The notes under the pieces were generated by a model, which did no database searches, was not told the origin of the DNA, and saw nothing but the letters and a program-made list of their open reading frames with translations. This document shows, one piece after another, positions 2,716-62,386 of a stretch of DNA of 64,000 nucleotides (positions are counted from its first letter, which is position 1; each line of letters starts with the position of its first letter). The position numbers and the translations under genes were made by a program. The stretch covers positions 124,001-188,000 of IMG/VR virus record IMGVR_UViG_3300026484_000007; one strand, 5' to 3'.

Positions 2716-2778
2716 TTTAAATCCTTTTTTTCAATTTTTTCTAACGACAAAAAAAAATGGAGAACAACTCTCCACTTT

Positions 2779-4442: not shown

Positions 4443-4686
4443 AAAAAAAGGACCCTTTAGTTCTCACCGCGGAGGCTTGCGGTATTCCGAGGAGCTTTCG
4501 GTCACGTTAACTTACTCACTCCCCGAAATCCGGGCCTCGTTGGATCCTACTAAAAGGTCCTGTTGACGGCCGAATTCGGTACTACTTAGTACCTACTGTT
4601 GGCCGCCTGCTAGGGATCTTTAGAAGATCCCCCTTGATAAGGTTTGGACCTACAACGTAAATCGTAGATCCTCTACCTTATCTACT
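4443..4686 (-). ncRNA. putative structured ncRNA 1 (~240 nt, four stem domains, two loop-E motifs)
   Basis: GC-rich intergenic island. Stems at 4636-4682, 4613-4631, 4565-4607 and 4450-4560, then a U-tract; directly downstream of the promoter at 4679-4722. Confidence 0.75.
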
Positions 4687-4722
4687 ATTTATATATCTAA
4701 TAAACGTTTACGAGTTCTAAAA
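4679..4722 (-). promoter_or_regulatory. phage promoter TTTTAGAAC...TATATAAATAG; 44 bp identical to 50901-50944
   Basis: Exact repeat upstream of both structured RNAs; same motif family as the cassette promoters. Confidence 0.75.
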
Positions 4723-4726
4723 CCCT

Positions 4727-9981: not shown

Positions 9982-9983
9982 TT

Positions 9984-10325: not shown

Positions 10326-10345
10326 CCATTCTCCTTTTTTAATTT

Positions 10346-10846: not shown

Positions 10847-10930
10847 TATATCTCCTTAATTTTTACAAAGATCTTTTTTAGATACGATCTAAAATAGAAC
10901 ACTAATAAAGTGTTCTTTTTTTAAATAACA

Positions 10931-12343: not shown

Positions 12344-12382
12344 TTTTTCTCCTTTGATTGTATTTTGATTGTTTTTATAATA

Positions 12383-13477
12383 TTATAATATATTTGAAAA
12401 TTCTAAAATGATCTCTCTATGATCATCAAAAAATTTTATATAACTTCCGTCAAATGTTCTGTTTTCAATATCTTTAATTCTAATAAATTCAATTGATTCG
12501 GCATCATCAGATGCTTTAGCCACGTTCTTAATTTTTTTAATTATTTGAGAATTATTGATTTTAACTCCATGAACTATCGATAATCTTCTTCCATAAAGAC
12601 TTCTTTTTGGATGATCAAAAACCATTTTTTTATTTATTTTATCAATATATTCAGAGTATTCTGATAAATCAATTCCTGTTTCTTCTTTTAATTCTCTCAG
12701 CGCTCCAGTTAATGAATTCTCGTTATTATTTAAAAATCCTCCTGGTAATGCATGTGCATCTTTTCCTGGATTATATTTTCTTTTAATACAAAGAACTTCA
12801 TCTTGCAAAAATAATACAAAATCCACAGTTACGAAATTTAAAGTTTCCGGATAAGGATAACAAGAAAATTTTAATTTTTCCTGTTCAAGATATTCTTCTT
12901 CGGATTTTAAAAATCCTTGAAGTTCGTCGTATCTATCCATAATAACATTCATAGTGCTTTCTGGTATAAATTTAACCATATGCTCTTCGAAAACTTCTTT
13001 TCTTAAATAACTCAATTTTTCTCTGATATCTATACTCGAAAGATTATCATGTTTATTATCAACATGTGACATATTAAATGATGGAAATAAATTTAAATAA
13101 TATGAACTTTCATCTTTATTATGTCCATATAGATAAATATTTTCATCAGATATATCATTATTAAAAGAATACGAATAAATCTCGTCGCAAATCGTTTCGC
13201 GAACATTTTCAGCCCATTTATTATCATTGCACAAATAATCAGGAATTGATATTATCTTTATTTTCTCTTGAATTTTTTCATCAAAAGAATTAATGATCAT
13301 TTCTCTGATTTCAGTGAATTTAAATGGATTTTTATAACTTAAATGTCTATCACCACTTCCTACTAAAATTAATATGTAATCCATATTATCTTCTATCATT
13401 TCATTTATGATCTCTTTATGAGCATTATGGAATGGTTGAAATCTTCCAATCAATACTCCTAATTTTTCTTTTTTCAT
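12383..13477 (-). CDS. nadM: bifunctional NMN adenylyltransferase / Nudix hydrolase
   Basis: GRFQPFHNAH and Nudix box GG...ALRELKEETG. Confidence 0.92.
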   Translation of the reverse strand: MKKEKLGVLIGRFQPFHNAHKEIINEMIEDNMDYILILVGSGDRHLSYKNPFKFTEIREMIINSFDEKIQEKIKIISIPDYLCNDNKWAENVRETICDEIYSYSFNNDISDENIYLYGHNKDESSYYLNLFPSFNMSHVDNKHDNLSSIDIREKLSYLRKEVFEEHMVKFIPESTMNVIMDRYDELQGFLKSEEEYLEQEKLKFSCYPYPETLNFVTVDFVLFLQDEVLCIKRKYNPGKDAHALPGGFLNNNENSLTGALRELKEETGIDLSEYSEYIDKINKKMVFDHPKRSLYGRRLSIVHGVKINNSQIIKKIKNVAKASDDAESIEFIRIKDIENRTFDGSYIKFFDDHREIILEFSNIL

Positions 13478-13970: not shown

Positions 13971-14104
13971 TGAAAACTCGTGATCCTAAAACGTTGCGCT
14001 TCATTGGATACACAAAGATATATACGAGTTCTAAAAATTTTAGAACTGCTTTTATATCGCTTGTATCTAAAAAAGATGCTACGTAGAAAATCAAGTTTTT
14101 CAAA
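13971..14104. repeat. ~130-bp imperfect palindrome, copy 1
   Basis: Centre GTTCTAAAA-A-TTTTAGAAC with complementary arms; other copies at 23947, 31661 and (half) 62256. Confidence 0.85.
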
Positions 14105-20862: not shown

Positions 20863-21879
20863 TTAATTTAATTTAATTTTTACTAAATCAATTGCTTGAT
20901 CTATATCTTCGTCGGTCGCTTCAAATTGATCTTTTAAAGATATTTTTAACTTCTCAAGAATTTCTTGATCAGTAAATTCTTCATCATTTATAAGATCTTT
21001 GCTAGAAAATCTTTTAAAGAAATCAAAAGTTTCTTTTTGAATTTCTTTGAATATTTCAATTTCTTTAGGATCAAAAGCCTCTAAATATTTTTTATGAGGA
21101 ACTTGAATATGTTCAAATTCCAAAGTCTCCGTATCCAAAATAACAACCTCTGGAGTATGATTATCCATTTGAGTTTCATAATCTCTTACAACCCTCCATA
21201 GATTCCAAGGGTTGATAAATAAAATATCATTGAAATAATCCGTAGGATATCCCAAGTGATAATGCCCGCAAATAATAACTTTTACATCATTTTCATGCGC
21301 CCATACTGATAATTCATCATAAGTAAATTCAGTTACTCTTGTTTTATCAGGAGTAATATTTTGATGAAAAACAGCGATCTTTAAAAGATCATTTGTAGTT
21401 CTATACCAAGAACCACAATCTTTTAAAAATAATTTCTTATCTTGAGGACTCTCGATATGTCTATAATCGAATCCTACTATTTCTGCGACAGGCTCTCCTA
21501 ATTCTTCATCGAATAAAGGATAGCCGCAATGATTTATATGAATAATTAAATCATCGTTTACTAATTCTTCAAAAATCGAATCTTTAATAGATTCTCTACC
21601 TTCCAACATATCATGATTACCAGCTGGACTAATTTCTTTTAATCCAGCCTGCTGATACATTAAACTAATTTTTTTATTAGCAATAAATTGCTTAAAAGAC
21701 CAATCTTTTTGCACATCAAAAAGATCTCCGGTAGATACTTTGTATTTAATACCTTTGTCTTTCATTAGATTAATAATAAATTGATGTTTATTAATCATAT
21801 CTTTTTCCCAACCTGGTTTTCTATATTTATCACGAAAACCAAGTCTTCTGTGTTCATCTTTAGTAATTAAAATTTTCAT
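20863..21879 (-). CDS. SbcD/Mre11-like metallophosphoesterase nuclease
   Basis: DEH, GDLFD, GNHD, GHYH. Confidence 0.85.
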   Translation of the reverse strand: MKILITKDEHRRLGFRDKYRKPGWEKDMINKHQFIINLMKDKGIKYKVSTGDLFDVQKDWSFKQFIANKKISLMYQQAGLKEISPAGNHDMLEGRESIKDSIFEELVNDDLIIHINHCGYPLFDEELGEPVAEIVGFDYRHIESPQDKKLFLKDCGSWYRTTNDLLKIAVFHQNITPDKTRVTEFTYDELSVWAHENDVKVIICGHYHLGYPTDYFNDILFINPWNLWRVVRDYETQMDNHTPEVVILDTETLEFEHIQVPHKKYLEAFDPKEIEIFKEIQKETFDFFKRFSSKDLINDEEFTDQEILEKLKISLKDQFEATDEDIDQAIDLVKIKLN

Positions 21880-23946: not shown

Positions 23947-24080
23947 TGAAAAACTGAGATCCTAAAACGTTGCGCTTCATTAGATACACAAAGATATATA
24001 GCAGTTCTAAAATTTTTAGAACTGCTTTTATATCGCTTGTATCTATTTTAGATGCTACATTGAAAATCAAAGTTTTCAAA
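23947..24080. repeat. ~130-bp imperfect palindrome, copy 2
   Basis: Near-identical to 13971-14104, with the same flanking motif and terminator. Confidence 0.85.
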
Positions 24081-30897: not shown

Positions 30898-30965
30898 AAT
30901 TTTCTCCTTTTATTTTTAATTTATTTTTAATTTTTCTTAATAATAAAAAAGCGATCTTTAAAAGA

Positions 30966-31625
30966 TCACTTTTGACTAATTTTAATTTCTTCGATTTTTA
31001 CTCCAAGTTCATTTAGATGAACGATAATTTCGCTTAACTCATAAGAACTTGCAAATTTGATTTCGAATACTTTTTCTACCTTTTCAACTTTTTCTACCTT
31101 TTCTACTTTTTCAGAACTTTTAGGTTTTTCGAAAACATAGTCTTCAATATATTTAGATGGATTTCTGCTTACTTCTGAAGCAATTTTTGAAGCATTTTTA
31201 AATCTTCCATCTTCATTAAGAATTTGACGAACAGTTTGATAATTATAAAAATCTGTCGCATGCGAAATTATATCATATATTGTATATTTAATATTTTTTT
31301 CTTTGCATTTATATACATAATTAAATATTTTAAATATATGAAATTTTTCTTGATTTGACAATGGTTTTCTATGTTTTCTATGTTTAACATTTTTAGAAAT
31401 GAAATTTGATTTTCTTTCGATAGAATTTTCAATTCTAGAAATTTCGTGTAATAGATCTGCTTTTGATAACGAACAGTATCTATAGACAGTCGATTTTCCT
31501 AAATCGTATTTATTGATTAAATCTTTAATTAAATCTTTATTAGATTCTTTTTTATTAAAAATTCTATCAACAACTTCTTTTAAAAACGCCACTTTCATTG
31601 CCGGATCAATAATTCTTTTTGCCAT
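30966..31625 (-). CDS. HTH-containing protein with EKV repeats
   Basis: KYDLGKSTVYRY HTH; (EKV)4. Confidence 0.6.
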   Translation of the reverse strand: MAKRIIDPAMKVAFLKEVVDRIFNKKESNKDLIKDLINKYDLGKSTVYRYCSLSKADLLHEISRIENSIERKSNFISKNVKHRKHRKPLSNQEKFHIFKIFNYVYKCKEKNIKYTIYDIISHATDFYNYQTVRQILNEDGRFKNASKIASEVSRNPSKYIEDYVFEKPKSSEKVEKVEKVEKVEKVFEIKFASSYELSEIIVHLNELGVKIEEIKISQK

Positions 31626-31660: not shown

Positions 31661-31795
31661 TGAAAACTCGTGATCCTAAAACGTTAAGCAACGATAGATA
31701 TCTAAAGATATATAGCAGTTCTAAAAATTTTAGAACTGCTTTTATATCGCTTGTATCTAAAAAAGATGCTACGTGGAAAATCAAAGTTTTCAAAA
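31661..31795. repeat. ~130-bp imperfect palindrome, copy 3
   Basis: Near-identical to copies 1 and 2. Confidence 0.85.
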
Positions 31796-35312: not shown

Positions 35313-35454
35313 AATTTCTCCTTTGTGTTTCTGTTTTTATTTTCTTCGGTATTTATAATGCGCTCCAAAGATTAAGTTTAAGCGCAATTTTTTCTAACGA
35401 CAAAAAAAGCGATCTTTAAAAGATCGCTTTTAAACTATTCATATACTACCTATA

Positions 35455-37137: not shown

Positions 37138-38853
37138 TTAAAAATCTATCCCGAGAATTCTTACGGATAATTTCTCAGATCCATTAAACGAATCTAATTC
37201 TGGTTGCCAATATATTTCACAGTAATCTTCTAAAGATCCTTTTATCGAATCTATTTTAGATTCTACCGAAGAATCGTGAAAAAACCACAATGCTTTAATA
37301 TCGATTATGTTTTTATTATCAGTAATATTCAATGTTAAATGGTTTTTATTTTTACCGATAATTCTATAATTTTTAATAAAACATCTTGTTTTGAATATAG
37401 GTTTTTTAAATTTATGACCGAATGGTTCCCATTTCATTAAATAATAATAAATATCAGTATCCCAAATATGAACTTGATTAATACCTATATAGAAATCGGC
37501 GACTATCTTAGTTTTGAATTGTTCTTTTGGTAATTTAGATGCTTCTTCTTGCAGTTTTAAAAATAAATCATTCAAAGATTCTGGTTTAAATCCAATTCCA
37601 CAAGCTTGTTTATGCCCACCAATATGGGTAAAAATATCTGGATTTTCTTCTCTGATATTTCTTAGAATATTTAATATATTTACATCTCCCACAGATCTTC
37701 CAGAACCTGAATAAAAACCATTGTCTTTAATATTGCAAACAATGCAAGGTTTATTATATTTTTCCGCAATTCTACCTGCAATAATCCCAAGAACACCATC
37801 ATATTCTTTTTTGAATTTTCCAGGAATTAAAATAAAATGTTCAGCTTTGATCCAATCTTTATAATACTTTTCAACGTAATCAATTAATTCTTGTTGAATA
37901 GCTTTTCTACTTTCATTTAATTGAAAAATATAATCCATCCATTTTTTAGCATTTTCGTAATCTTCCTGAATTAAATAATTAAAACCATAGACTGGCGACG
38001 CCATTCTTTGAGTAGCATTTAATGCAGGTACTAACGTAAAACTAAAATCACTAGCTACCGGAGCATTATTCATAATTTTAAATGAATTCAGATATTGATG
38101 TTTAGTGTTTTCGAAGTGATTATTTATAAAATCATTTACTAAAAATCTATTAATACTGATATTTAACGGCATTACATCGCTTAAAGTCGTGATTGCCATA
38201 AGATCAATACTATCTTGATACCATTGTTTTAATCTTTCATTTCTAGCATCCTCAGAGAGATCTTTTAAAGATCGCTTTAATAATTCTCTTAAAAAAATAA
38301 AATAAACAACAGTTCCAGAAATATCTTTAAATTCAAAATTGCAATCTGGTTTATATGGATCTATAATAGCATCTGCTTCTGGTATTTGATAATTACCGTC
38401 TATTTTTTCGGGTTGATGATGATCAGTAATAATTACCTTAGCATTTTTTCTATGCGCAAGAATGCATGCATCGAAACTAGTAATTCCATTATCAGCAGTG
38501 CAATATAATTTTACATCATCTTCAACATATTCTGGAATAAAACCATAACCTTTTTTTCTATCAGTAATTTCGATCTTTACTGGATACGGAATAAATTCTT
38601 TAAAAAAACGATATGAAAGAGTTGCAGTTCCTAATCCATCAGTATCACTATCATGAATTAATTTAATTTTTTCTTTTTTTAGAATGCTCTCATAAAATAA
38701 TTCTACTCCTTTTTTTATTTCGGAGTCTGGGTCGGAGGAATATTGATCGATGATATCAATGAAACTTTCGTAATCTTTTATCTTTTCATCTTTAATTCTT
38801 TTTCTTAATAATTCATCTAACTCTTCTAAAGAATTTAACGTTGGTGTAGCCAT
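37138..38853 (-). CDS. recJ: ssDNA-specific exonuclease RecJ
   Basis: HDSDTDG, TADNG, TDHH, SDVMPL, GSGRS, GGHKQACG, EPFG. Confidence 0.93.
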   Translation of the reverse strand: MATPTLNSLEELDELLRKRIKDEKIKDYESFIDIIDQYSSDPDSEIKKGVELFYESILKKEKIKLIHDSDTDGLGTATLSYRFFKEFIPYPVKIEITDRKKGYGFIPEYVEDDVKLYCTADNGITSFDACILAHRKNAKVIITDHHQPEKIDGNYQIPEADAIIDPYKPDCNFEFKDISGTVVYFIFLRELLKRSLKDLSEDARNERLKQWYQDSIDLMAITTLSDVMPLNISINRFLVNDFINNHFENTKHQYLNSFKIMNNAPVASDFSFTLVPALNATQRMASPVYGFNYLIQEDYENAKKWMDYIFQLNESRKAIQQELIDYVEKYYKDWIKAEHFILIPGKFKKEYDGVLGIIAGRIAEKYNKPCIVCNIKDNGFYSGSGRSVGDVNILNILRNIREENPDIFTHIGGHKQACGIGFKPESLNDLFLKLQEEASKLPKEQFKTKIVADFYIGINQVHIWDTDIYYYLMKWEPFGHKFKKPIFKTRCFIKNYRIIGKNKNHLTLNITDNKNIIDIKALWFFHDSSVESKIDSIKGSLEDYCEIYWQPELDSFNGSEKLSVRILGIDF

Positions 38854-40808: not shown

Positions 40809-41720
40809 TTATAATACATAACCCTTTACATTCTCGAATTCATATAATTTATCTTTCGGAAATACTACGTTTGGTGGAAATTCCACATCTTCTAAAAGAT
40901 AAGCTCCACCTCCAGCAATAATTACTTTTTCCGATGTCCCAAGAATTTTCTTTTCTGAAACAAGAATACTATTGAATAATTTTTGAATAAAATTATTTTT
41001 TAATTCAGTGATCATTTCTGGAATTCCTTCGACTTCTCTTCCACCGAAAACATATTTTTTCTTTAATAAAATTTTAATTGCTTCTTGTTCAGTAAATTTA
41101 TCTTTAAATTTTGCTTCTAGCCAATTAGTAAAAGGTCTTATGATACTTACGACTCCGTGAGTAGGAAACGATTTACATTTAGCTCTAATTGGCATATTAT
41201 CTTGGAAAGCTAAAAAGTTGATAGTATTGAATCCAATATCGATCACTGCCGCACTTTCAGGAGTTGTTCCAGTATCATGAATATAACTATAATATACTCC
41301 AGCGCCTTGAGGAATTATATTAATATTATTGATGTTTAACGTAATTCCATTTACAGTGATTGTTTTTAATTTTTCAACGAATCTTTCTTTTTCGCTCCAG
41401 TCGGCTAAAGCTAAACCAGTTCTTAAATCAATATCCTCGATCAATTTTCCATCTTTAATTAAATTTAATTTATTTAAAACATGAAATAAAATCAGTGGAC
41501 CGAATTCTTCTAAAAATTCATATTTAGTTGTTGTAAAACTTTCATCGATTGCTACGTCTCCAACTCTATATTTTTTACCGTTGTATTCGTAAATTTCGTC
41601 TTCGCCATAATTAATTCCAGTATCAATAGCGAAAGAGATCGCTGTGGGTAATTTGAATAATTTTCCATTCGCAGATAATTTTGTACTACTATACCCTATA
41701 TCTAAACCTAATCTATACAT
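40809..41720 (-). CDS. actin-like ATPase, ParM/StbA family
   Basis: GLDIGYSSTK, IPQGAG, VIDIGFNT, IIAGGGA, FENVKGY. Confidence 0.88.
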   Translation of the reverse strand: MYRLGLDIGYSSTKLSANGKLFKLPTAISFAIDTGINYGEDEIYEYNGKKYRVGDVAIDESFTTTKYEFLEEFGPLILFHVLNKLNLIKDGKLIEDIDLRTGLALADWSEKERFVEKLKTITVNGITLNINNINIIPQGAGVYYSYIHDTGTTPESAAVIDIGFNTINFLAFQDNMPIRAKCKSFPTHGVVSIIRPFTNWLEAKFKDKFTEQEAIKILLKKKYVFGGREVEGIPEMITELKNNFIQKLFNSILVSEKKILGTSEKVIIAGGGAYLLEDVEFPPNVVFPKDKLYEFENVKGYVL

Positions 41721-49338: not shown

Positions 49339-49635
49339 TTACACAGGGATTATATCTCCGACTTTTACGTCGGGTGTGTGGCTTTCAGCCACAATTCCCC
49401 CGCTTAGGCGAGGGTCGTAGCACGCCACGAATGGCGTGCAATGGTACTCATGTACCATCGCGGCAAAGAGCCATATCGGCCCTCTACCGCTTAAAATTAT
49501 ACCTACCCCAGGTTCAACCTGAGGCAATCTTTTAATTGCCTCAGGTAACTCCGCAGGGGTAATAACCCCACTTGTGAGCTCAAAGCTCACAAGTGCAATT
49601 TTATCGCTTACTTCTTTTACATCATATTTTATCAT
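49339..49635 (-). CDS. csx3: CRISPR ring nuclease Csx3/Crn3
   Basis: GVITPAEL, GIILSGRGPIWLFA..H.YH, YDPRL.GGIV..SH. Confidence 0.9.
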   Translation of the reverse strand: MIKYDVKEVSDKIALVSFELTSGVITPAELPEAIKRLPQVEPGVGIILSGRGPIWLFAAMVHEYHCTPFVACYDPRLSGGIVAESHTPDVKVGDIIPV

Positions 49636-50151: not shown

Positions 50152-50379
50152 TTTCCTCCTTTATAATTTTTTTGCTAATTAAATATCTAATAAAACTAAA
50201 GCAGTTCTAAAAATTCTTTAAAAATAAAAATGAAGGAGGGAGAGAGGAAAGAGAAAGAAAAGAGAGGGAAAATGTCGCTATATTTCTAATAAAACTTTTT
50301 AGTTCTAAAATCGATTTTAAAATAATTTAAAAATAATTTAAAAAATAAATTTTTTTGATAAATAAAAGTCTGGCGAGAG

Positions 50380-50697
50380 TTATAATAACTCCTTCCAAAC
50401 TTCGTGCAAATCGTTTGCTGCTTTATATAATTTTTTTTTCAATTTCTTTAATTTTTTGATTTTGCCTCTATTTACACGAAGCTCGTCCTCGAGCTTCGTT
50501 TTATGGCGGGAATACTCCGCCATTTCTTCCCCAGAGGCTCCTACCTCTGGGAAGTTTAATCTTTCATTCTGCAACCAGCAGAACTTGAGGTGCTCTCGCA
50601 CCTCTTTTAATTCTTTTAATTCGCATTTTACTTTCTCAGCCTCATATCTGAGGCTATTTTCATAATCGAATACTTCATTTTTTAAATCTTTTCTCAT
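50380..50697 (-). CDS. small coiled-coil early-type protein
   Basis: Cassette promoter and SD. Confidence 0.7.
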   Translation of the reverse strand: MRKDLKNEVFDYENSLRYEAEKVKCELKELKEVREHLKFCWLQNERLNFPEVGASGEEMAEYSRHKTKLEDELRVNRGKIKKLKKLKKKLYKAANDLHEVWKELL

Positions 50698-50772
50698 TTC
50701 TTTCTCCTTTGATTTTTTTTGCTAATTAAATATCTAATAAACCAAAAGCAGTTCTAAAAATTCTTTAAAAAT

Positions 50773-50908
50773 AAAAAAGATAGGAGGAGTCCGCATAAGC
50801 GAACTCCCGGACCTCAAAGGGTCACGTAGCTTTATGACACAGATATGGTTACTCGTTCCGAAGAACTTTCACCATATCGAAAGGTGCCATAAAGCTACCC
50901 TATCTACT
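50773..50908 (-). ncRNA. putative structured ncRNA 2 (~135 nt, multi-way junction, loop E, UUCG tetraloop)
   Basis: Closing stem AGAUAGG/CCUAUCU, 15-bp and 8-bp stems, GAAA/GAGUA internal loop, GUUC-UUCG-GAAC, two more hairpins, U-tract; own promoter. Confidence 0.8.
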
Positions 50909-50944
50909 ATTTATATATCTAATAAACGTTTACGAGTTCTAAAA
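50901..50944 (-). promoter_or_regulatory. phage promoter identical to 4679-4722
   Basis: 44-bp exact repeat. Confidence 0.75.
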
Positions 50945-51000
50945 TAATTTAAACCATTTTTTCTAACGACAAAAAAACGCGTGAGATCTTAAATAGATCA

Positions 51001-51546
51001 TCACGCGCGAATATCGATTAAGAACTTTTTTTCTTTGAGAGTATTTACTCTCATTTGAAGTTCCTTAATCGTTTTTGGATCTTCAAAAGATCCTTCTGTA
51101 ACTTCGCAAGAACTTGTCTCTAGACTTTCGATAATTTCTTCATCTAGGACCTTTCTTGTTTTTTTAGAAGAATCTTTTTTCGATTCTTTTTTTACTTTTT
51201 CAATTTTGAGAGATTCTTCTATATACAATCTCTCATAACCCTCAGCTAATCTGAGGGTTTCAATAGCAAGATCTTTGAAGTAAGCTGCTTTGCTTTTAGC
51301 AGCTCTCACTTCATTAATCTTTTCATGGCGCTCTTTTTTAAGCGCTTTTTTCAAAGATTTGATCTCCTCGTTACGTTTTTCAATAACGCTTTTTAGGAGA
51401 TCAATCTCCTTTTTTTGGTCCTCAATTTTTTTATCGCGGCTGAGGATCATTTCCGCTAACTCTTTTGGCGAATACTTTGTCGCCAGTTCAATAACGCGTT
51501 TGAACTTATCAAATACGTTATTGATTTTTTCCTCTAATTTTTTCAT
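51001..51546 (-). CDS. coiled-coil protein
   Basis: 181-aa ORF with promoter motif upstream. Confidence 0.7.
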   Translation of the reverse strand: MKKLEEKINNVFDKFKRVIELATKYSPKELAEMILSRDKKIEDQKKEIDLLKSVIEKRNEEIKSLKKALKKERHEKINEVRAAKSKAAYFKDLAIETLRLAEGYERLYIEESLKIEKVKKESKKDSSKKTRKVLDEEIIESLETSSCEVTEGSFEDPKTIKELQMRVNTLKEKKFLIDIRA

Positions 51547-53547: not shown

Positions 53548-54147
53548 TTATTTTACCAAAACCCAATCTTCAGCTAAAATATCTGCTTGACTTGCTAACC
53601 ATCCTGGTTGTATTGTTCCAAGAGCTGTTCTCATAGCAATTACTTCATCAACTTTAACATGTCCGGAATCTCTATAATCATTCTCATCCCTTTTTATAAT
53701 ATCTGGAAAATATCTTTTTAATTCAAATTGACATTGGCAAGAATGTAACATCTTTTTTGTAATTAAGCGTAGATACATACCTTTACCGTTCCATCCAATT
53801 CTTGCAACTTTATATCCCGCTTTTAATAAAGTAATTGCGTCTCCAAATGAAAATCTAGTTTCTGGATCTTCTAAATTTACATAATTCTTATCAAAGAATT
53901 CTTTATTAATAAACCAACAATCTGGATTTTGCAATTGCTCATTAACTCCGTCCCAAACTTCATCAATACTATTAATATCTCCAGCGATAACTCCAACAAC
54001 TTCATCTGATTTAAAATCGACTGTATTCATATCATGTTCACTGATACTGATAAAACTATAATTACCATTTAATGCTTCTAAATCTTTTCCAGTGACTTCT
54101 AGTACTTCGCTAATTTTATTTCCTCTTAATGTTAAAATTCTTTTCAT
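53548..54147 (-). CDS. DUF2829/Tad2-domain protein with an extra N-terminal domain
   Basis: FGDAI.LLKAG.KVAR.GWNGKGM...WLASQADILAEDW. Confidence 0.85.
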   Translation of the reverse strand: MKRILTLRGNKISEVLEVTGKDLEALNGNYSFISISEHDMNTVDFKSDEVVGVIAGDINSIDEVWDGVNEQLQNPDCWFINKEFFDKNYVNLEDPETRFSFGDAITLLKAGYKVARIGWNGKGMYLRLITKKMLHSCQCQFELKRYFPDIIKRDENDYRDSGHVKVDEVIAMRTALGTIQPGWLASQADILAEDWVLVK

Positions 54148-55188: not shown

Positions 55189-55980
55189 TCATTTTAACAC
55201 CTGCTTTCTAATTTCTGGATCTTCAAAAGCTCCACCATAGTATTCAGTGGTAAAACCATCGCCTTGACTCATACTTCCTCTTAAGAAAGTACATGAATGT
55301 TTAATATTAATTAATTTTACGTAAACTGAATCAGTTTCAGCAACTTTACTTAATTCTTCATATAAAGCTTTAGTAAGATCTTCTTGCAACCATCCTCTTT
55401 GAGCAACATATCTAACTACTCTTTGTAATTTGCTAATTCCTAATACAAATTTCTCTGGAATATAAGAAATTATTACTTTACTATCATCTTTGAATAATGT
55501 AGAAAATGGTGCTGCATGATGACTACAAACTGCAGTTAAATCAACTTCACTTGTAATAGGTAAATTCTTTTCAGATTCATTCGGGAATCTCGCTAATCTT
55601 ACAGGAACATGAAATCTTCCACCCATTAATTCTCTATCATCATGAGTATTATCTGCGCACCACATTTTTACAATTCTCGCAGGAGTTCCTATATTTCCAA
55701 CTTCACATTCTTCCCAAACATTTGGATCATTCATATCAATTTTCATCGCATCAAATGTCTTTGTAAGATAATAAGAACTTACTAATCTTAAAATATAATG
55801 AAGTTGATCATTGTAATCTTCTTTAACATTAAATACATTTCCATTAATTTTGAATTCCGGAATCTCTTTATATTCATTCCATAATTCATTGAATTTTTTA
55901 TTAGAAGTCTCAGGGTATCTTTTTAAAAATCTTTCTTTAGTGTATTCTTTGACTTCTTTTTCTGTAACTTGAAAATTCAT
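55189..55980 (-). CDS. folE: GTP cyclohydrolase I
   Basis: TPARIVKMW, CSHHAAPF, GISKLQR, LQEDLT, HSCTFLRG. Confidence 0.92.
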   Translation of the reverse strand: MNFQVTEKEVKEYTKERFLKRYPETSNKKFNELWNEYKEIPEFKINGNVFNVKEDYNDQLHYILRLVSSYYLTKTFDAMKIDMNDPNVWEECEVGNIGTPARIVKMWCADNTHDDRELMGGRFHVPVRLARFPNESEKNLPITSEVDLTAVCSHHAAPFSTLFKDDSKVIISYIPEKFVLGISKLQRVVRYVAQRGWLQEDLTKALYEELSKVAETDSVYVKLINIKHSCTFLRGSMSQGDGFTTEYYGGAFEDPEIRKQVLK

Positions 55981-56229
55981 TTATTCTCCTTCTCTTGTAT
56001 ATAATTTTTCAATGCATTTTGGGCATACACTCAATCCACTATTAGCCAATAAAGCTAAATCAGTTCTTGCTAAAGCAAATTGTTCTAATTGATTGCGAAA
56101 ATCCCTTTCAGGATTTTCTTCCATTTGACAAACGCGCTTTTCATTTAACCAAAAATGTATTATATCATCTGGATCTTTGATTAATGATGCGCTTTTATTG
56201 TATTCTCTTAAAACCATAATCATAATCAC
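55981..56229 (-). CDS. hypothetical protein
   Basis: 82-aa ORF ending in CxxC. Confidence 0.6.
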   Translation of the reverse strand: MIMIMVLREYNKSASLIKDPDDIIHFWLNEKRVCQMEENPERDFRNQLEQFALARTDLALLANSGLSVCPKCIEKLYTREGE

Positions 56230-56232
56230 TCC

Positions 56233-56330
56233 TTTATTTTATTTTATTTTATTTTATTTTACTTTACTTTATTTTATTTTATTTTATTTTATTTTATTTT
56301 ATTTTATTTTATTTTATTTTATTTTATTTT
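56233..56330. repeat. (TTTTA)n pentanucleotide microsatellite, about 19 units
   Basis: Seen directly; two CTTTA variant units. Confidence 0.9.
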
Positions 56331-56756
56331 GCATTTTTCAAAATCAGCTTTATACAATTCCGATTTATCTTGCGATTTATCTTTTAACCATTTTTCTCCA
56401 TCTTCTTTTTCCCCTTTAGCCCATCTTTCAGCTTGAGCTGGATCTTGTTTTCTTGAAGATATTTCTTTTACAGTCTCTTGTAATGTACATTTAGGATTAT
56501 ATCCAGCTTTTCTAATTTCTCCAATTGCAATAACTCTTAAATCAGTCAGCGCATCGATCATCTCATGAATATCATTGTTTTTTACTGCATCTTTGAATTC
56601 TTGCAATTCTTCTTCTAATTTTTCAATTGCTTTTTCAGGATTGAAAGTTAATCCATATCTTTCCTCATTTAATTTCACGATTTTATCAATTGGATCATTT
56701 GTAATAATATCTTCTAATATATTTAAACCTGCTTTAATTTCTTTTACTAATTTCAT
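56319..56756 (-). CDS. MazG-like / all-alpha NTP pyrophosphohydrolase
   Basis: LEEELQEF...EMIDALTDL. Confidence 0.75.
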   Translation of the reverse strand: MKLVKEIKAGLNILEDIITNDPIDKIVKLNEERYGLTFNPEKAIEKLEEELQEFKDAVKNNDIHEMIDALTDLRVIAIGEIRKAGYNPKCTLQETVKEISSRKQDPAQAERWAKGEKEDGEKWLKDKSQDKSELYKADFEKCKIK

Positions 56757-56833
56757 TTTATCTCCTTTTTCTAATGACAAAAAAATTAAATAGTAAAGCT
56801 TTAACTTAAGCTCTACTATTTATATCTGTTGAA

Positions 56834-57397
56834 TTATTTTTCGATTTGTGCGGTTTCTTTAGTTACTTCTGTTTCTTCTGTATCTTCAGAATTATCTGTA
56901 TCTTCAGAATTATTTTCATTATCTGTATCTTCAGATACATCTTTTTTAGTATAATAAACTTTTATATAAATGGTTAAAGGATTATCTTCATTAATTGCCT
57001 TACTTCCATCTGGAATTTTAAATATAAATTTCCCATTAAAAATCGAAACTCCCAGTTCTGAACTATCCTTTAGATAATAAGATAATCCTTCTCCAGCTAT
57101 AAAACCATACTTAGTATCCTTAGCGGTAAGCATATTAAAACGAACTATTTCAGAATACTCTGTTCCGTCCGTGAAAATATTCGCATCCAGGTCATCCTCC
57201 GTCAATTCAAATTTCAAAATTTGCTCATAAACTGGTTTTCCGTCGAACCAAATCTCATTTGCTTCTTTTTCTTTATTTAATTCATATCGATACAAATATT
57301 CATCTTTAGTGACAAAAAAATCTAAACATTTAGATTTAAAATAATTAAAAATTTCAATTAGATCGCTGGTTAATTTTGAACTGATCAATTCTTTCAT
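56834..57397 (-). CDS. acidic hypothetical protein
   Basis: 187-aa ORF with SEDTDN repeats. Confidence 0.65.
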   Translation of the reverse strand: MKELISSKLTSDLIEIFNYFKSKCLDFFVTKDEYLYRYELNKEKEANEIWFDGKPVYEQILKFELTEDDLDANIFTDGTEYSEIVRFNMLTAKDTKYGFIAGEGLSYYLKDSSELGVSIFNGKFIFKIPDGSKAINEDNPLTIYIKVYYTKKDVSEDTDNENNSEDTDNSEDTEETEVTKETAQIEK

Positions 57398-57819
57398 TTT
57401 TCATCCTTTTTATAATGGGATTCCCCAAAAATTCTTACTAAAATATAAAATAAAATTTTTTGAAATTTACCTGCTCCTAAGACAGTCATCGCTTCTAAAA
57501 AAATTTTATCGCAAAGTTCCCGCGGTAGGTTTATTGAACAATCTTTACTATAAAGATAATCATGTATAACTGCGGCTTTACCATATTTTGGATCCATAGG
57601 TGGATATATATTCCAAAATATTCTCGGTATGCTCGCAAAATTGGTTTCAAATCCTTCCGGAACTATTATATATGTTCGTTCCGGTAATACATCAGTGTAA
57701 TAGCAAAATTCTTCGATTAATTTCCATTTTCCATTATCTTGATATTCTAACTGTAACGGGCTAGTGAACTTTGCCGGTTTCTTTGGTTTCATTGTTTTCA
57801 TTGTTTTCTTTATTTCCAT
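57394..57819 (-). CDS. DUF1353-family protein
   Basis: VPEGFETNFASIPR...AAVIHDYLY. Confidence 0.85.
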   Translation of the reverse strand: MEIKKTMKTMKPKKPAKFTSPLQLEYQDNGKWKLIEEFCYYTDVLPERTYIIVPEGFETNFASIPRIFWNIYPPMDPKYGKAAVIHDYLYSKDCSINLPRELCDKIFLEAMTVLGAGKFQKILFYILVRIFGESHYKKDEK

Positions 57820-58249
57820 TAGACATCTCCAAATCATAAATTTTTTTAAATTTGTTGATATTCGGAGGTCTTTTTAATTTTTCAAGAGATCTTCTAATTA
57901 AAGCAGTTACTTCAATTTCAGGAATTTTTAAAAGCTGAGAAATTTCTTTAACCGAATAAAAATACATAGAATAAGCTCGAAGATTTTTTTTCGCTTTAGC
58001 TATTCTATCTCTACGGATTTTATTAAAACTATTATTTAAAATTAAAATATCATCTTCTAGTCTTTCGATTATCCTTCTCAGCTCTCGAATTTCTCTATTC
58101 AAAACAGATCCCTCATTATAATCCAAGAAAAAATTCAAAAGTTTTTGACAGCGATCTTTTTCGGTTTTTAATAATTTTATAAGAAAGACTGGATTTTTTT
58201 CCAGTTTTTCTGATTGTTTTTCTAGTTTGATTTTTTCTAAAGAATCCAT
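57761..58249 (-). CDS. sigma70 region-4-like HTH protein
   Basis: YSVKEISQLLKIPEIEV..LIRRSLEKLK. Confidence 0.55.
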   Translation of the reverse strand: MDSLEKIKLEKQSEKLEKNPVFLIKLLKTEKDRCQKLLNFFLDYNEGSVLNREIRELRRIIERLEDDILILNNSFNKIRRDRIAKAKKNLRAYSMYFYSVKEISQLLKIPEIEVTALIRRSLEKLKRPPNINKFKKIYDLEMSNGNKENNENNETKETGKVH

Positions 58250-58262
58250 AGTGATCCTTTAT

Positions 58263-58859
58263 TTATTTTATCTGTAAATCTATTTTTGGATTTTTAAATA
58301 TCTTCTCCCCAGTTTCTATAGCTTTTAATAACTTATCCCACATTTCAGGATCTTTCCATTCTGATTTAATTTGATCGCTAAATATAATGTCTTTTAAATC
58401 AAAATCTATCAAGTTCAGATCTTTCTTTTTGGCTTCTGCCCAACCAGTTGCTGTTTCGTGAACTCTAACTTTATGAACTTTAACTTTTCCTTCTCCATTA
58501 TTCATTTTTGTATGTTTAAGAATTTCTTGAATAATTTTAAATAAAAGAATAGATTGTGCTTCGGCGCTTGAACTCATTGGTAAAATAATATGTCTATCCG
58601 AATAGTTCTTAGCTACATTCACTAACTCTTCATCTTTATCCCATACAGTAATGGCGTGATCAAAACTATCAATGATGTCTTTAATAGTCCCTTTCATTAA
58701 TCCAAAATCATAAATCATCATTCCATTGTCTAATTTATTTCCTTTTAATACCACTTCAACAATATAACTATGACCGTGAATACTATGTGAACAGCGTTCG
58801 CTTGTGCAATTTCTCACAATATGTGCATTTTCGTATTTAAATAATTTTCTAATTTTCAT
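58263..58859 (-). CDS. queD: 6-carboxytetrahydropterin synthase
   Basis: AHIVRNC..RC..SIHGHSY, DFG, FDH, SAE, HETATG. Confidence 0.92.
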   Translation of the reverse strand: MKIRKLFKYENAHIVRNCTSERCSHSIHGHSYIVEVVLKGNKLDNGMMIYDFGLMKGTIKDIIDSFDHAITVWDKDEELVNVAKNYSDRHIILPMSSSAEAQSILLFKIIQEILKHTKMNNGEGKVKVHKVRVHETATGWAEAKKKDLNLIDFDLKDIIFSDQIKSEWKDPEMWDKLLKAIETGEKIFKNPKIDLQIK

Positions 58860-59534: not shown

Positions 59535-59580
59535 ATTAATCCTTTTTTTAATTTTTTCGAGCAAATAAAAATTTTCTATT

Positions 59581-59726
59581 TATCCGGGCGAGATGTTATT
59601 GGTGCCTCGCCGGGATGCCAGTACTTTTTTTAGGTGGCGCTTGGTCAAACCACCTTTTAAAGATCTCGTTGGAGTTAACTCCAACGCGGTGCCAGATATA
59701 TTTTTAGTGCCTCTGGTCAGGCACTT
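59581..59726 (-). ncRNA. structured leader or ncRNA with two tandem H-type pseudoknot units
   Basis: Two copies of stem-UGACCA loop-stem-A tract-CUGGCA, each followed by a hairpin; promoter motif at about 59749-59767. Confidence 0.6.
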
Positions 59727-59780
59727 ATTCTCCTTTAATCTTTTCTCAATAATATAATTTCAATGATTAAAAAGGATCTT

Positions 59781-60812
59781 CTAAAGATCCTTTCTTTGAG
59801 CAATAAGATCAATAATTTTTGATATCGTAGCAATAAAATGAAAATTCTTCATCTTTACGATATCTATTTGATTATACATTTCTATTAAAATCGATTTCGT
59901 TCCGAAATCTATATATTCAGAATCTATTAATTTTTTATAAATAAAATCATAATTCAATAAAAGATCTTCTTTTAAAATTTTAAGAATGTATTCATAATAT
60001 TGACTAAAATGTGAATCACTTTTTGAATTTTTATTTATTTCATTAATTTTTGCTTTATCTAAATTATTTAAATAATTGAATAAATATTCCAAAGTTTGGA
60101 TTATGTATTCTTCATTTCCTGTAAGATTTAAAGCTTTATTTGGATCAAATATAAATTCCCCAGTTACGCTATTAACTTCAAGGTTACTGATTAATTCTCT
60201 TAGACCTCTAACTAAATTTAATTTTACGAATGATTTTAATAATTCTTCATCGTATTTTACATTTTCAGTTTCTAGAATTTTTTTAACTCTATTTAAAGTT
60301 TGGATCTCATCAAGATCCTTAAAATGTAATCTATAATTAAATCTAGTAATCAGTGCATTATCAAGCTTTTCTGGATTATTAGTCGTCGCAAGAAAAGCAG
60401 TGTTATGCTGATATTTTTCAAGTGGCCCATCTTTTAAAACTACTTGAGCTTGTTGACTTAATCTATCAATTTCTTCAATTATTACTAATTTTTGCTTTGA
60501 TTGTAAAGCTCTTGCTTGCAACCAACTTTGTAATTTATCAATATCTTCTACTTTTCTTCCAAGAATAAAAATATCATTTGGATGTTTGATAATTTTGGCT
60601 TGCATAATTTTATTTAAAGAAGTCTTTCCGAATCCTGCTGGACCGTAACTTAAAACATTTCCTTGTATGAATTCATTATTATAAAATTTTACAAAAATAT
60701 CCTTGATATACTCTGGATCTTTTCCCTCGCCATTTAACGTACTTGGAAAAATTAAATCGTCCGGAGTTCTTGGACGATGTTTTTCAAACCACGATTTATA
60801 AACTTCTGCCAT
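59781..60812 (-). CDS. clamp loader (RFC small subunit / gp44-like AAA+)
   Basis: WFEKHRP, GPAGFGKTS, IIEEIDRL, ALITRF. Confidence 0.9.
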   Translation of the reverse strand: MAEVYKSWFEKHRPRTPDDLIFPSTLNGEGKDPEYIKDIFVKFYNNEFIQGNVLSYGPAGFGKTSLNKIMQAKIIKHPNDIFILGRKVEDIDKLQSWLQARALQSKQKLVIIEEIDRLSQQAQVVLKDGPLEKYQHNTAFLATTNNPEKLDNALITRFNYRLHFKDLDEIQTLNRVKKILETENVKYDEELLKSFVKLNLVRGLRELISNLEVNSVTGEFIFDPNKALNLTGNEEYIIQTLEYLFNYLNNLDKAKINEINKNSKSDSHFSQYYEYILKILKEDLLLNYDFIYKKLIDSEYIDFGTKSILIEMYNQIDIVKMKNFHFIATISKIIDLIAQRKDL

Positions 60813-62255: not shown

Positions 62256-62319
62256 AAAAAACTTGATTTTCTATGTAGCATCTTTTTTAGATACTAAGGA
62301 TATATACGAGTTCTAAAAT
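62256..62319. repeat. half copy (one arm, inverted) of the ~130-bp palindrome
   Basis: ACTTGATTTTCTATGTAGCATCTTTTTTAGATAC is the reverse complement (one mismatch) of the right arm of copy 1. Confidence 0.75.
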
Positions 62320-62386
62320 TTTCTATAGATTTTTTCTGACGACAAAAAAATTGCTCGGTTAACGAGCAATTTTTATTTTATCTTTT

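What the first reader, a model, noticed from the sequence alone, without database searches (positions are those of the whole stretch)
50773..50944. Second structured RNA sharing promoter, 5' end and loop-E motif with ncRNA 1
Seen on the minus strand: AGAUAGG [GUAGCUUUAUGGCAC..GAUAUGGU-GAAA-GUUC-UUCG-GAAC-GAGUA-ACCAUAUC..GUGUCAUAAAGCUAC] [GACC/GGUC] [GGAGUUCGC/GCGGACUCC] CCUAUCU-U5. It has a cUUCGg tetraloop, G-U pairs and a loop E. The 44 bp spanning its promoter and 5' end are identical to those of ncRNA 1, 46 kb away. It fills a cassette slot in the island that holds csx3. Inference: an RNA-based counter-defence or decoy, co-regulated with ncRNA 1.
Basis: partly seen in the sequence, partly recalled or inferred. 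Interest (0 to 1): 0.8.

Follow-up and report, generated by a model that had tools for sequence, protein, structure and literature searches.

The report
Orphan structured RNA in jumbo phage
A giant virus of hydrothermal-vent bacteria carries a short gene that makes a tightly folded RNA instead of a protein, and this RNA shares its promoter and a likely protein-docking kink with a second RNA in front of the virus's own RNA polymerase genes; its job is untested.

Summary
Window 50773-50944 (- strand) contains a promoter-like motif, a 128-nt RNA and a U-run. The RNA folds into a four-helix junction (-66 kcal/mol, z = -9.8) with a C(UUCG)G tetraloop and a GAAA/GAGUA S-turn (loop E) internal loop. 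Its first 44 bp are identical to those of ncRNA 1 at window 4679-4722.

It matches no Rfam family, tRNA or ORF. I found no homologue or paralogue in IMG/VR, JGI metagenomes, GenBank phages, 185,579 species genomes or the related contigs I fetched. No RNA sequencing run was listed.

New context:
- The promoter belongs to a family of at least 12 copies that drive the small-gene cassettes, including csx3.
- ncRNA 1 is a member of a leader RNA that recurs in related vent phages, upstream of a small zinc-finger-like gene and the beta' gene.
- All four such leaders carry an AGUA/GAA S-turn, and the flanking stems covary.

Best reading (0.4): a self-terminating, probably early, protein-binding RNA that shares a factor with the polymerase-operon leader. 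The counter-defence decoy idea rests only on location and is untested. This is a real, new orphan RNA of moderate interest.

The parts
50906..50944 (-). Promoter-like region of ncRNA 2: the upstream element TTTTAGAAC, a 10-nt spacer, then TTTATTAGATATATAAATAG. The start site is presumed to lie at about 50905-50908.
   Evidence: It is identical over 44 bp to the ncRNA 1 promoter and 5' end. It belongs to a motif family with at least 12 copies on the - strand of the window. TTTTAGAAC also precedes the leader RNA of relative L121.
50778..50905 (-). ncRNA 2 body, 128 nt, a four-helix junction. P1 is 50899-50905 with 50778-50784; the P2 arm is 50826-50898; P3 is 50809-50825; P4 is 50785-50808.
   Evidence: MFE -66 kcal/mol, z = -9.8. 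The same fold is predicted up to 70 C. The - strand folds better than the + strand. No ORF overlaps it and no Rfam family or tRNA matches.
50850..50870 (-). S-turn (loop E, sarcin-ricin type) internal loop: GAAA at 50867-50870 opposite GAGUA at 50850-50854. It encloses a 4-bp helix capped by C(UUCG)G at 50855-50866.
   Evidence: Sequence read. It is the only such hairpin in the window. An S-turn-like loop appears in 0 of 400 shuffles of this RNA.
50773..50777 (-). U-run directly after the 3' strand of P1 (it continues as AUUUUU); the presumed terminator tail.
   Evidence: The terminator scan flags the P4 hairpin plus this tail.
50971..51008 (-). Terminator hairpin and U-run of the upstream 181-aa ORF. 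It separates that gene from the ncRNA 2 promoter.
   Evidence: Sequence (CGCGTGA...TCACGCG followed by T7).
50722..50760 (-). A separate promoter of the same family, serving the downstream 105-aa ORF (50380-50697).
   Evidence: (families D1, D7, D16). It is followed by the shared 5' UTR ending in AAAGGAG and an ATG.
4445..4724 (-). ncRNA 1: promoter at 4686-4724 and a structured RNA of about 240 nt ending in a U-run 25 nt before the 124-aa zinc-finger-like ORF (4047-4421). Its S-turn hairpin is at 4483-4530.
   Evidence: (z = -7.6). The hairpin is homologous to those in the leaders of L121 and L128.

Best explanation
ncRNA 2 is a free-standing transcription unit of a 272.6-kb jumbo phage from a hydrothermal vent. 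A phage promoter of the cassette class starts an RNA of about 128-133 nt. The first 7 nt of that RNA pair with its last 7 nt, directly before a U-run. Closing this P1 helix therefore both ends the transcript and buries both RNA ends.

The product is a rigid, heat-stable four-helix junction. Its long arm (27 bp in three segments) displays an S-turn (AGUA/GAA type) kink, a classic protein-docking surface, and the RNA has almost no single-stranded sequence.

I propose that it works by binding a protein through the S-turn. The same factor would recognise the S-turn hairpin in the leader (ncRNA 1) of the operon that encodes a conserved zinc-finger-like protein and the phage RNA polymerase beta' piece. 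Because the two RNAs have an identical promoter, they would be made together. ncRNA 2 would then act as a second, unlinked binding site that titrates or co-regulates that factor. Alternatively, the bound factor could set how much transcription runs on into the accessory cassettes downstream.

Shown: the sequence, the predicted fold, the enrichment of the motif, the promoter family, and the conservation and covariation of the S-turn hairpin in ncRNA 1-type leaders.

Inferred: transcription, timing, termination, protein binding, and the identity of the partner.
For: - Fold: z = -9.8, centroid equals MFE. The - strand is 12 kcal/mol better than the + strand. The fold is kept to 70 C.
- Own promoter and own U-run, with the upstream gene's terminator before it and a separate promoter after it.
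- The promoter motif recurs at least 12 times in front of small genes and RNAs. The same motif precedes the polymerase operon. In phiKZ-type phages the non-virion polymerase genes are early genes (review PMC13282480).
- An S-turn is present in the MFE fold of ncRNA 2, ncRNA 1 and the three leaders from relatives (L121, L128, L135). In 400 shuffles of each RNA it appears 0-2 times.
- In the ncRNA 1/L121/L128 hairpin, AGUA and GAA are invariant while 6 of 14 stem pairs change on both sides. 88.9% of cells are paired; 1 of 500 shuffles reaches that.
- The S-turn is absent from the phage's other small RNAs.
- The single difference in the shared 5' end (G in ncRNA 2, A in ncRNA 1) is matched by C and U in the two unrelated partner strands. 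The 5' helix is therefore kept in both RNAs.
Against: - There is no transcript evidence of any kind.
- No homologue of ncRNA 2 was found, so its own helices have no covariation support.
- Its S-turn has the opposite polarity to that of the leaders (GAAA on the 5' strand). The covariance model of the leader hairpin does not detect it, so a common binding partner is not assured.
- S-turns can also be purely architectural.
- The leader RNA is missing in several relatives that keep the operon (L125, L126, L132, L133).
- No RNA-binding protein was identified. The model of the zinc-finger-like protein was poor (pLDDT 54).
Confidence: 0.4

Rival explanations
1. Counter-defence decoy. The RNA is made early, together with Csx3, the Tad2-like protein and other cassette products, and it sequesters or misleads a host immune protein. 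Candidates are an RNA-sensing or RNA-cutting effector, or an enzyme that attacks the ribosomal sarcin-ricin loop.
For: - Location: csx3 lies 1.1 kb downstream and a Tad2-like gene 2.6 kb upstream. The phage also carries an Apyc1-like MBL fold, NADAR, and NAMPT plus NMNAT/Nudix genes.
- It has the same promoter class as those cassettes.
- RNA-based counter-defence exists in other phages (Racr, PMC10651486; phage crRNA-like RNAs, bioRxiv 10.1101/2024.10.29.618823).
- The leaders of L121 and L128 have an apex AGUA-G-GNRA-C-GAA that resembles the sarcin-ricin loop.
Against: - No test bears on it.
- There is no CRISPR-repeat family match inside the RNA, no tRNA-like call, and no matching hairpin in 185,579 species genomes.
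- ncRNA 2 itself has a UUCG loop rather than GNRA, and its motif polarity is inverted, so it is not a sarcin-ricin loop copy.
- The neighbouring cassette ORFs are ORFans without any defence-related annotation.
Confidence: 0.15
2. Cis-acting terminated leader (attenuator). The element mainly controls how many polymerases that start at its promoter continue into the 105-aa gene and the cassettes beyond. ncRNA 1 appears to do this for the polymerase operon. The short RNA would be a by-product, like the lambda PR'-tR' 6S transcript.
For: - ncRNA 1 and the leaders of L121, L128 and L135 end in a closing helix plus U-run 25-50 nt before the next start codon, with no promoter in between. There the arrangement is that of a leader.
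- ncRNA 2 has the same promoter, the same 5' end and the same design, with the S-turn arm nested inside the helix that precedes the U-run.
- It points at the downstream genes.
Against: - The 105-aa gene has its own complete promoter between the RNA and its ribosome-binding site, so read-through is not needed.
- No alternative (antiterminator) pairing is evident. The MFE structure dominates the ensemble.
- The elaborate junction with a UUCG cap is more than a terminator requires.
Confidence: 0.2
3. Recombination by-product with little or no function. The promoter and 5' end were copied from ncRNA 1 by the kind of exchange between repeated promoter modules seen in T4-type hyperplastic regions. 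The body would be a relic or a foreign fragment.
For: - The 44-bp identity includes the non-conserved spacer, which differs in all other promoters of the family. That points to recent copying rather than selection on promoter function.
- The bodies are unrelated (local score 20 against 15 +/- 2; 19 of 500 shuffles reach it).
- A neighbouring slot (50225-50330) holds a degenerate promoter and a CU-rich stretch that looks decayed.
- An independent Logan assembly breaks inside the repeat.
- A PIG-L gene precedes both ncRNA 2 here and the leader in L121 and L128.
Against: - The helices are essentially perfect: 48 pairs, one bulge, one 5/1 loop.
- The 3' end is exactly complementary to the copied 5' end.
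- The RNA carries two specialised motifs, the S-turn and C(UUCG)G.
- z = -9.8 is not what decay produces.
Confidence: 0.1
4. A diverged member of a known RNA class: tRNA-like or Y RNA, 5S or SRP RNA, a ribozyme or a riboswitch.
For: It has a 7-bp terminal helix, three arms and a size of about 130 nt. Four-way junctions occur in tRNA, in the SAM-I riboswitch and in hairpin ribozymes.
Against: - Rfam 15 gives nothing at the gathering threshold. At E up to 10 it gives only scattered hits of 10-18 bits to unrelated families.
- ARAGORN finds nothing.
- There is no T-loop and no anticodon-type loop.
- The junction has no unpaired linker nucleotides.
- A promoter lies between the RNA and the next gene.
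Confidence: 0.03

Closest known systems
ncRNA 1-type leader of the zinc-finger-like/beta' operon in related vent jumbo phages (undescribed; window 4445-4685, L121 9383-9522, L128 about 5396-5535, L135 5376-5565)
   Same: Identical promoter and first 15 nt (compared with window ncRNA 1). The 5' end forms a terminal helix. It is GC-rich in an AT-rich genome, has an AGUA/GAA S-turn internal loop, and ends in a closing helix followed by a U-run.
   Different: The bodies show no detectable similarity. The S-turn polarity is inverted. The leader-hairpin covariance model does not match it. It does not lie upstream of the operon, and the next gene has its own promoter.
Sarcin-ricin / loop E (bulged-G, S-turn) motif of 23S rRNA helix 95 and eukaryotic 5S rRNA (established RNA structural knowledge)
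   Same: AGUA lies opposite GAA, flanked by Watson-Crick helices, with an extra G-A next to it.
   Different: In ncRNA 2 the motif sits 4 bp below a UUCG loop rather than directly under a GAGA loop, and the strands are swapped. Only the L121 and L128 leaders look like the sarcin-ricin loop itself. The 3D geometry was not tested.
Promoter-stem-loop cassettes (PeSLs) of T4-type hyperplastic regions (PMC2839356, PMC4122927)
   Same: Repeated promoter and terminator modules flank small, variable, mostly ORFan genes. Identical module copies could mediate shuffling.
   Different: The phage lineage and the motif are unrelated. Here one slot holds a structured RNA rather than an ORF. No recombination event was observed directly.
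RNA anti-CRISPRs (Racr, PMC10651486) and phage crRNA-like RNAs (bioRxiv 10.1101/2024.10.29.618823)
   Same: A small non-coding phage RNA located next to counter-defence genes.
   Different: Those RNAs mimic CRISPR repeats. ncRNA 2 has no CRISPR-repeat family match and no repeat-spacer layout.
Short terminated leader transcripts and RNA-based antitermination in lambdoid phages (lambda PR'-tR' 6S RNA, HK022 put RNA; from my own knowledge)
   Same: A promoter-proximal structured RNA ending at a terminator, upstream of and pointing at downstream genes.
   Different: There is no sequence or structural similarity. A second promoter follows ncRNA 2. No antiterminator is known here.
Small stable phage RNAs of unknown role (T4 RNA C and RNA D, from my own knowledge; phiKZ ncRNAs, noted in PMC13282480)
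   Same: Discrete, structured, non-coding and phage-encoded, with function unknown.
   Different: No homology. The T4 RNAs are processed from the tRNA cluster, whereas this RNA has its own promoter and terminator.

Membership tests
Any Rfam 15 family | Covariance-model score at or above the family's gathering threshold | tested here: not met
   no match in the whole window; with E up to 10 on 50500-51200, the best hits are 18.4 bits (STnc490, threshold 56) and 17.7 bits (sRNA162, threshold 78), both spanning the terminator and the AT-rich flank.
tRNA, tmRNA or tRNA-like RNA | Cloverleaf with a T-loop and an anticodon-type loop, detectable by ARAGORN or the Rfam tRNA clan | tested here: not met
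   no tRNA or tmRNA in the window; no tRNA-clan hit. P3 has a 6-nt loop on a 4-bp stem, and P4 is 10 bp with a UUAU loop.
S-turn / loop E / sarcin-ricin motif | AGUA opposite GAA in an internal loop bounded by Watson-Crick helices | tested here: met
   GAAA (50867-50870) lies opposite GAGUA (50850-50854) between an 8-bp and a 4-bp helix. The motif appears in 0 of 400 shuffles. It is the only such hairpin in 64 kb.
S-turn / loop E / sarcin-ricin motif | Non-canonical pair geometry (bulged G, trans Hoogsteen pairs) | not testable with these tools
   This needs chemical probing or a solved structure.
S-turn / loop E / sarcin-ricin motif | Motif conserved while the flanking stems covary | tested here: inconclusive
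   ncRNA 2 has no homologues, so this cannot be tested for it. For the ncRNA 1/L121/L128 hairpin the feature is met: AGUA and GAA are invariant and 6 of 14 pairs change on both sides.
ncRNA 1-type polymerase-operon leader (this phage clade) | Match to the covariance model of the leader S-turn hairpin, and a position directly upstream of the zinc-finger-like gene | tested here: not met
   model R2 hits only window 4483-4530, L121 and L128. ncRNA 2 lies 46 kb away, in front of an unrelated 105-aa ORF.
Independent small-RNA gene | Own promoter | tested here: met
   By motif only. It is the same element as at least 12 other sites in front of genes and RNAs, and it is separated from the upstream gene by a terminator.
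Independent small-RNA gene | Own intrinsic terminator | tested here: inconclusive
   The closing helix P1 is followed directly by U6, and the scan flags P4 plus the tail. However, P1 is AU-rich and closes a multibranch loop, and efficiency cannot be computed.
Independent small-RNA gene | A discrete transcript is observed | not testable with these tools
   No RNA run was listed. The read-laying run failed on a filter.
RNA anti-CRISPR (Racr) | Mimics a CRISPR repeat of the host system | tested here: inconclusive
   No Rfam CRISPR-DR family hit lies inside the RNA (the only one, at 16.8 bits, lies at 51080-51102 within the upstream ORF). The host and its repeats are unknown.
Protein- or ligand-controlled attenuator leader (riboswitch, PyrR or TRAP type) | Lies between the only promoter and the regulated ORF, with competing terminator and antiterminator folds | tested here: not met
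   A full promoter (50722-50760) lies between the RNA and the ORF. A single fold dominates the ensemble.
PeSL-like shuffling cassettes | Repeated promoter and terminator modules flanking variable small genes | tested here: met
   families D1-D7: 10 copies of a 62-nt promoter and 5' UTR module between 42.8 and 50.8 kb. One search gives the aligned promoter cores.

The most novel reading that the evidence does not exclude
ncRNA 2 and the ncRNA 1-type leaders form a new class of phage S-turn RNAs that act as molecular decoys. They would be abundant early transcripts whose sarcin-ricin-like kink soaks up a host protein that normally recognises the ribosomal S-turn, protecting translation during infection. 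Such a protein could be an abortive-infection nuclease or glycosidase aimed at the sarcin-ricin loop, or a translational GTPase. This would be an RNA-only counter-defence of a kind not yet described.
Probability: 0.1. Interest if true: 0.85.

Novelty: new variant of a known kind. Interest (0 to 1): 0.55.

Why it matters
Phage-encoded small RNAs are poorly charted, and almost none are known from jumbo phages of thermophilic or vent hosts. This phage carries at least five small structured RNAs driven by one promoter family.

Two of them share an S-turn motif. That motif is conserved, with covariation, in the leader of the RNA polymerase operon in a clade known only from metagenomes.

If a common S-turn-binding factor exists, it would link control of the phage's own transcription machinery to an accessory (anti-defence) gene island. 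It would also define a new RNA family absent from Rfam. If the RNA is instead a decoy, it would add a new type of RNA-based counter-defence.

Either way, the element provides a compact, heat-stable four-way-junction RNA that can be tested directly.

Tried and rejected
**Known families.** Rfam at the gathering threshold and at E up to 10 on ncRNA 2, ncRNA 1, L004 and the relatives gave no family. ARAGORN found no tRNA.

**Nucleotide homologues.**
- GenBank phages by megablast and blastn: none.
- IMG/VR pattern scans for the promoter plus 5' end, the S-turn hairpin, two promoter variants and two leader-apex patterns found only the source contig or chance hits.
- The JGI metagenome scan for the 19-nt promoter core gave 64 loci. 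Only the source contig is real, with 3 copies.
- The scan of 185,579 species genomes for the S-turn hairpin gave 45 chance hits, none of which forms a hairpin.

**Synteny route.** Both flanking ORFs are ORFans. Exact-protein look-ups return only the source sample.

**Paralogues and distant copies.** Model R1 of ncRNA 2 found nothing in the window, in L029 or in the relatives' loci. The bodies of ncRNA 1 and ncRNA 2 are not significantly alike.

**Possible partner.** The fold of the zinc-finger-like protein came out at pLDDT 54, too poor for a fold search. Pfam and PHROGs gave nothing for the neighbours.

**Antisense idea.** A 15-nt perfect complement to the NAMPT mRNA (window 11537-11551) has E = 0.013 and lies inside a stable stem, so I judged it chance.

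**Host-promoter idea.** L051 has the 19-mer before a tRNA-Glu, but the spacing to TTAGAAC differs. I did not pursue it.

**Synteny 'PIG-L, one gene, then the RNA'.** The PIG-L proteins are 33% identical, but the gene in between is not clearly homologous. This remains a lead only.

Full report
**Where the window comes from.** The window is bases 124001-188000 of a 272,602-bp contig, IMGVR_UViG_3300026484_000007 (= Ga0256837_1000001), from a hydrothermal vent metagenome.
- It has 27.5% G+C and almost all genes lie on the - strand.
- It encodes a split multisubunit RNA polymerase beta' piece, helicases, a ligase, RecJ and an actin-like protein.
- It also encodes many auxiliary or counter-defence-type proteins: Csx3, Tad2-like, an Apyc1-like MBL fold, NADAR, NAMPT with NMNAT/Nudix, and QueC, QueD and FolE.
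- It is a jumbo phage with no close relative in GenBank phages.

**The observation.** On the - strand, 50944 to 50773 reads as follows.
- A promoter-like stretch: TTTTAGAAC, 10 nt, then TTTATTAGATATATAAATAG.
- An RNA that begins AGAUAGG.
- The RNA folds into a four-helix junction with no unpaired junction nucleotides.
 - P1 (7 bp) joins the two ends.
 - P2 is a 15-bp helix, a 5/1 internal loop, an 8-bp helix, the internal loop GAAA/GAGUA, a 4-bp helix and a C(UUCG)G tetraloop.
 - P3 is a short hairpin.
 - P4 is a 10-bp hairpin.
- A U-run follows P1 directly.

Support for the fold:
- The MFE is -66 kcal/mol, z = -9.8, and the centroid equals the MFE.
- The complementary strand folds to only -54 kcal/mol.
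- The same fold is predicted up to 70 C, which suits a vent host.
- No ORF of 40 aa or more overlaps the element.
- The element is one of the local G+C peaks (about 47-51% against a 27.5% background).

The 44 bp at 50901-50944 are identical to 4679-4722. One G/A difference and five more identical bases follow.

**Promoter and cassette context.** The promoter is not private to the two RNAs. The core (T/C)AT T(A/G)(G)ATA(T/A)NT(A)A(A/T)TAG, often preceded by TTTTAGAAC, occurs at least 12 times on the - strand of the window.
- It precedes csx3 (49675), six other small ORFs between 47.2 and 50.7 kb, three tandem cassettes at 42.9-43.4 kb, a small gene at 37.05 kb, ncRNA 1 and ncRNA 2.
- In the protein cassettes it is followed by a shared 5' UTR (GCAAAAAAAATCAAAGGAG).
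- This architecture resembles the promoter-stem-loop cassettes of T4-type hyperplastic regions (PMC2839356, PMC4122927).
- Outside the window, the same contig carries three more small GC-rich RNAs behind the same promoter type. Two are paralogues with compensatory changes in one hairpin (L004).
- Because the motif also heads the operon containing the beta' piece, and non-virion polymerase genes are early genes in phiKZ-type phages (PMC13282480), I infer that this is an early promoter class. That is an inference, not a result.
- The spacer between TTTTAGAAC and the core differs in every other copy but is identical in ncRNA 1 and ncRNA 2. The 44-bp identity therefore reflects recent copying or gene conversion, not promoter constraint alone.
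- An independent Logan assembly of the sample is 100% identical and breaks exactly inside this repeat.

**Search for relatives of ncRNA 2.**
- No Rfam family matches and no tRNA was called.
- Exact and degenerate pattern scans of IMG/VR found only the source contig.
- The JGI metagenome scan for the promoter core found the source contig three times plus chance hits.
- A scan of one genome for each of 185,579 species for the S-turn hairpin gave 45 scattered hits, none of which forms a hairpin. The hairpin is therefore not copied from a conserved cellular RNA.
- Both flanking ORFs are ORFans among 5.8 billion proteins.
- A covariance model of ncRNA 2 finds no second copy in the window, in the ncRNA 3 region or in about 65 kb from related phages.
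- Conclusion: ncRNA 2 is at present a singleton, and its own helices cannot be tested by covariation.
- No RNA run was listed, and my one read-laying run was rejected by a filter. Transcription remains unproven.

**What ncRNA 1 turned out to be.** The beta' piece has relatives of 50-72% identity on metagenome contigs, several from vent-type samples. I fetched nine of them.
- They share the order: a 123-129-aa Cys/His-rich protein (63-69% identical; C-x-C ... C-x-H, SWIM-like by pattern), a few small genes, then beta'.
- In four lineages a promoter and a structured, U-run-terminated RNA lie directly before that protein's ribosome-binding site: the window, L121 (with L122 and L123), L128 and L135.
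- In L125, L126, L132 and L133 the RNA is absent.
- TTTTAGAAC precedes the L121 RNA and is the only copy on the gene strand in 21 kb.
- All four RNAs have an AGUA/GAA internal loop in their MFE fold, as does ncRNA 2. In 400 composition-matched shuffles of each RNA such a loop appears 0-2 times. Caveats: these were mononucleotide shuffles scored on MFE folds, and I had seen some of the motifs before writing the test.
- In L121 and L128 the apex reads AGUA-G-GNRA-C-GAA, strikingly like the sarcin-ricin loop.
- Aligning the hairpins of the window, L121 and L128 shows AGUA and GAA invariant, while 6 of 14 stem pairs change on both sides. 88.9% of cells are paired, 1 of 500 shuffles reaches that, and sliding the partners destroys the signal.
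- None of these RNAs matches Rfam.
- The phage's other small RNAs lack the motif.

**How ncRNA 2 relates to that family.** It shares the promoter, the first 15 transcribed nucleotides and the motif type, but not the body (local alignment score 20 against 15 +/- 2 in shuffles).
- The model of the leader hairpin does not detect it, because its S-turn is inverted: GAAA is on the 5' strand and GAGUA on the 3' strand.
- In both RNAs the shared 5' end forms the 5' strand of a helix. The one difference between them (G against A) is matched by C and U in two unrelated partner strands. This suggests that both RNAs are under selection to sequester their 5' end.
- Unlike ncRNA 1, ncRNA 2 is followed by a complete promoter for the next gene (50722-50760). 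It therefore does not need to be a leader.

**Most likely mechanism (0.4).** ncRNA 2 is a self-terminating, probably early transcript that acts through protein binding at its S-turn arm. It has almost no single-stranded sequence for base-pairing with a target, and its paired ends and U-tail suit a long-lived RNA. The most economical partner is whatever recognises the S-turn hairpin in the polymerase-operon leader. ncRNA 2 would then titrate that factor, or place the accessory cassettes downstream under the same control.

**Rivals.**
- A cis-acting attenuator (0.2).
- A by-product of promoter-module recombination (0.1).
- A diverged known RNA class (0.03).

A weak lead for the history of the locus: a PIG-L gene lies just upstream of ncRNA 2 in the window and just upstream of the leader in L121 and L128 (33% identity). 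The ncRNA 2 promoter may therefore mark the ancestral leader position, with about 46 kb now lying between the two copies of the repeat. The intervening gene is not clearly homologous, so I give this little weight.

**Verdict.** The feature is real and the description accurate. ncRNA 2 is a new orphan structured RNA, tied by promoter, 5' end and motif to an undescribed leader RNA family of vent jumbo phages. Its function is open. The anti-defence reading is not excluded and not supported.

Noticed in passing
L004 about 2095-3030 (- strand), the same place as L029 about 8250-9204; same contig, outside the window: Three further small GC-rich RNAs lie behind the same promoter type. Two are 86-nt paralogues with compensatory changes in hairpin 1, and one is about 160 nt. 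All three end in the same double-hairpin 3' module. No S-turn is present. A weak T-arm or tmRNA-like hit lies at L004 1752-1821 (+), below threshold.
   Followed up: partly
window 4047-4421 (-), plus L121 9555-9926, L128 5568-5939, L129 36-407, L125 7296-7670 and L126 228-599: A conserved 123-129-aa Cys/His-rich protein (C-x-C ... C-x-H, SWIM-like by pattern; no Pfam or PHROG hit) always lies just upstream of the phage beta' gene. In four lineages it directly follows the S-turn leader RNA. The AlphaFold model was poor (pLDDT 54).
   Followed up: partly
window 50225-50330 (-): Another cassette slot without an ORF. It holds a shortened promoter-like motif followed by a run of about 50 nt of pyrimidines (CU-rich, with CCUCC-like stretches complementary to the AAGGAGG ribosome-binding sites). 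The same tail-plus-promoter module that follows ncRNA 2 comes next.
   Followed up: no
window about 14030-14100, 24005-24075 and 31720-31790 (-), and 62263-62335 (+): A repeated element of about 70 bp (TTGATTTTC..GTAGCATCTTTTTTAGATAC..GATATAAAAGCAGTTCTAAAA). It contains the reverse complement of TTTTAGAACTGC and may be a different or antisense promoter class.
   Followed up: no
window 59774-59790, 51077-51093 and 37225-37239, with further close copies such as those at 21376-21390, 30953-30967 and 35411-35425; also inside ncRNA 1 (RNA positions 56-72): The palindrome GGATCTT-NNN-AAGATCC recurs many times on both strands. It may be a terminator hairpin or a protein-binding site.
   Followed up: no
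window 59560-59735 (-): An intergenic GC-rich stretch of four hairpins (about 170 nt) lies between the ClpP-like and AAA genes. It has no Rfam match, no S-turn and no obvious promoter of the cassette class.
   Followed up: partly
window 11537-11551 (+) compared with ncRNA 2 positions 53-67: A 15-nt perfect identity makes ncRNA 2 complementary to the NAMPT mRNA. With E = 0.013 and a position inside a stable stem, it is probably chance.
   Followed up: partly
window 5063-5905, 8709-13477, 49339-49635, 53548-54147 and 55189-58859: Dense auxiliary and counter-defence gene content: an Apyc1-like MBL fold, QueC, NADAR, NAMPT, NMNAT-Nudix, Csx3, Tad2-like, GTP cyclohydrolase I, a MazG-like protein and PTPS (QueD). 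This suggests 7-deazaguanine DNA modification, NAD+ regeneration, and destruction or sequestration of cyclic-nucleotide signals.
   Followed up: partly
window 40809-41720 (-): A phage-encoded actin-like protein (ALP_N plus MreB-like C-terminal domains).
   Followed up: no
L135 1495-1612 (+): In a 50% relative, a GC-rich structured stretch lies directly upstream of QueC. It has no Rfam match, including no preQ1 riboswitch, and may be an undescribed leader.
   Followed up: partly
L051 1114-1217 (-) (MDTB01015031.1): An unrelated metagenome contig carries the exact 19-nt promoter core immediately before a tRNA-Glu gene. This could hint that the core resembles a host-type promoter. The spacing to TTAGAAC differs.
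   Followed up: no
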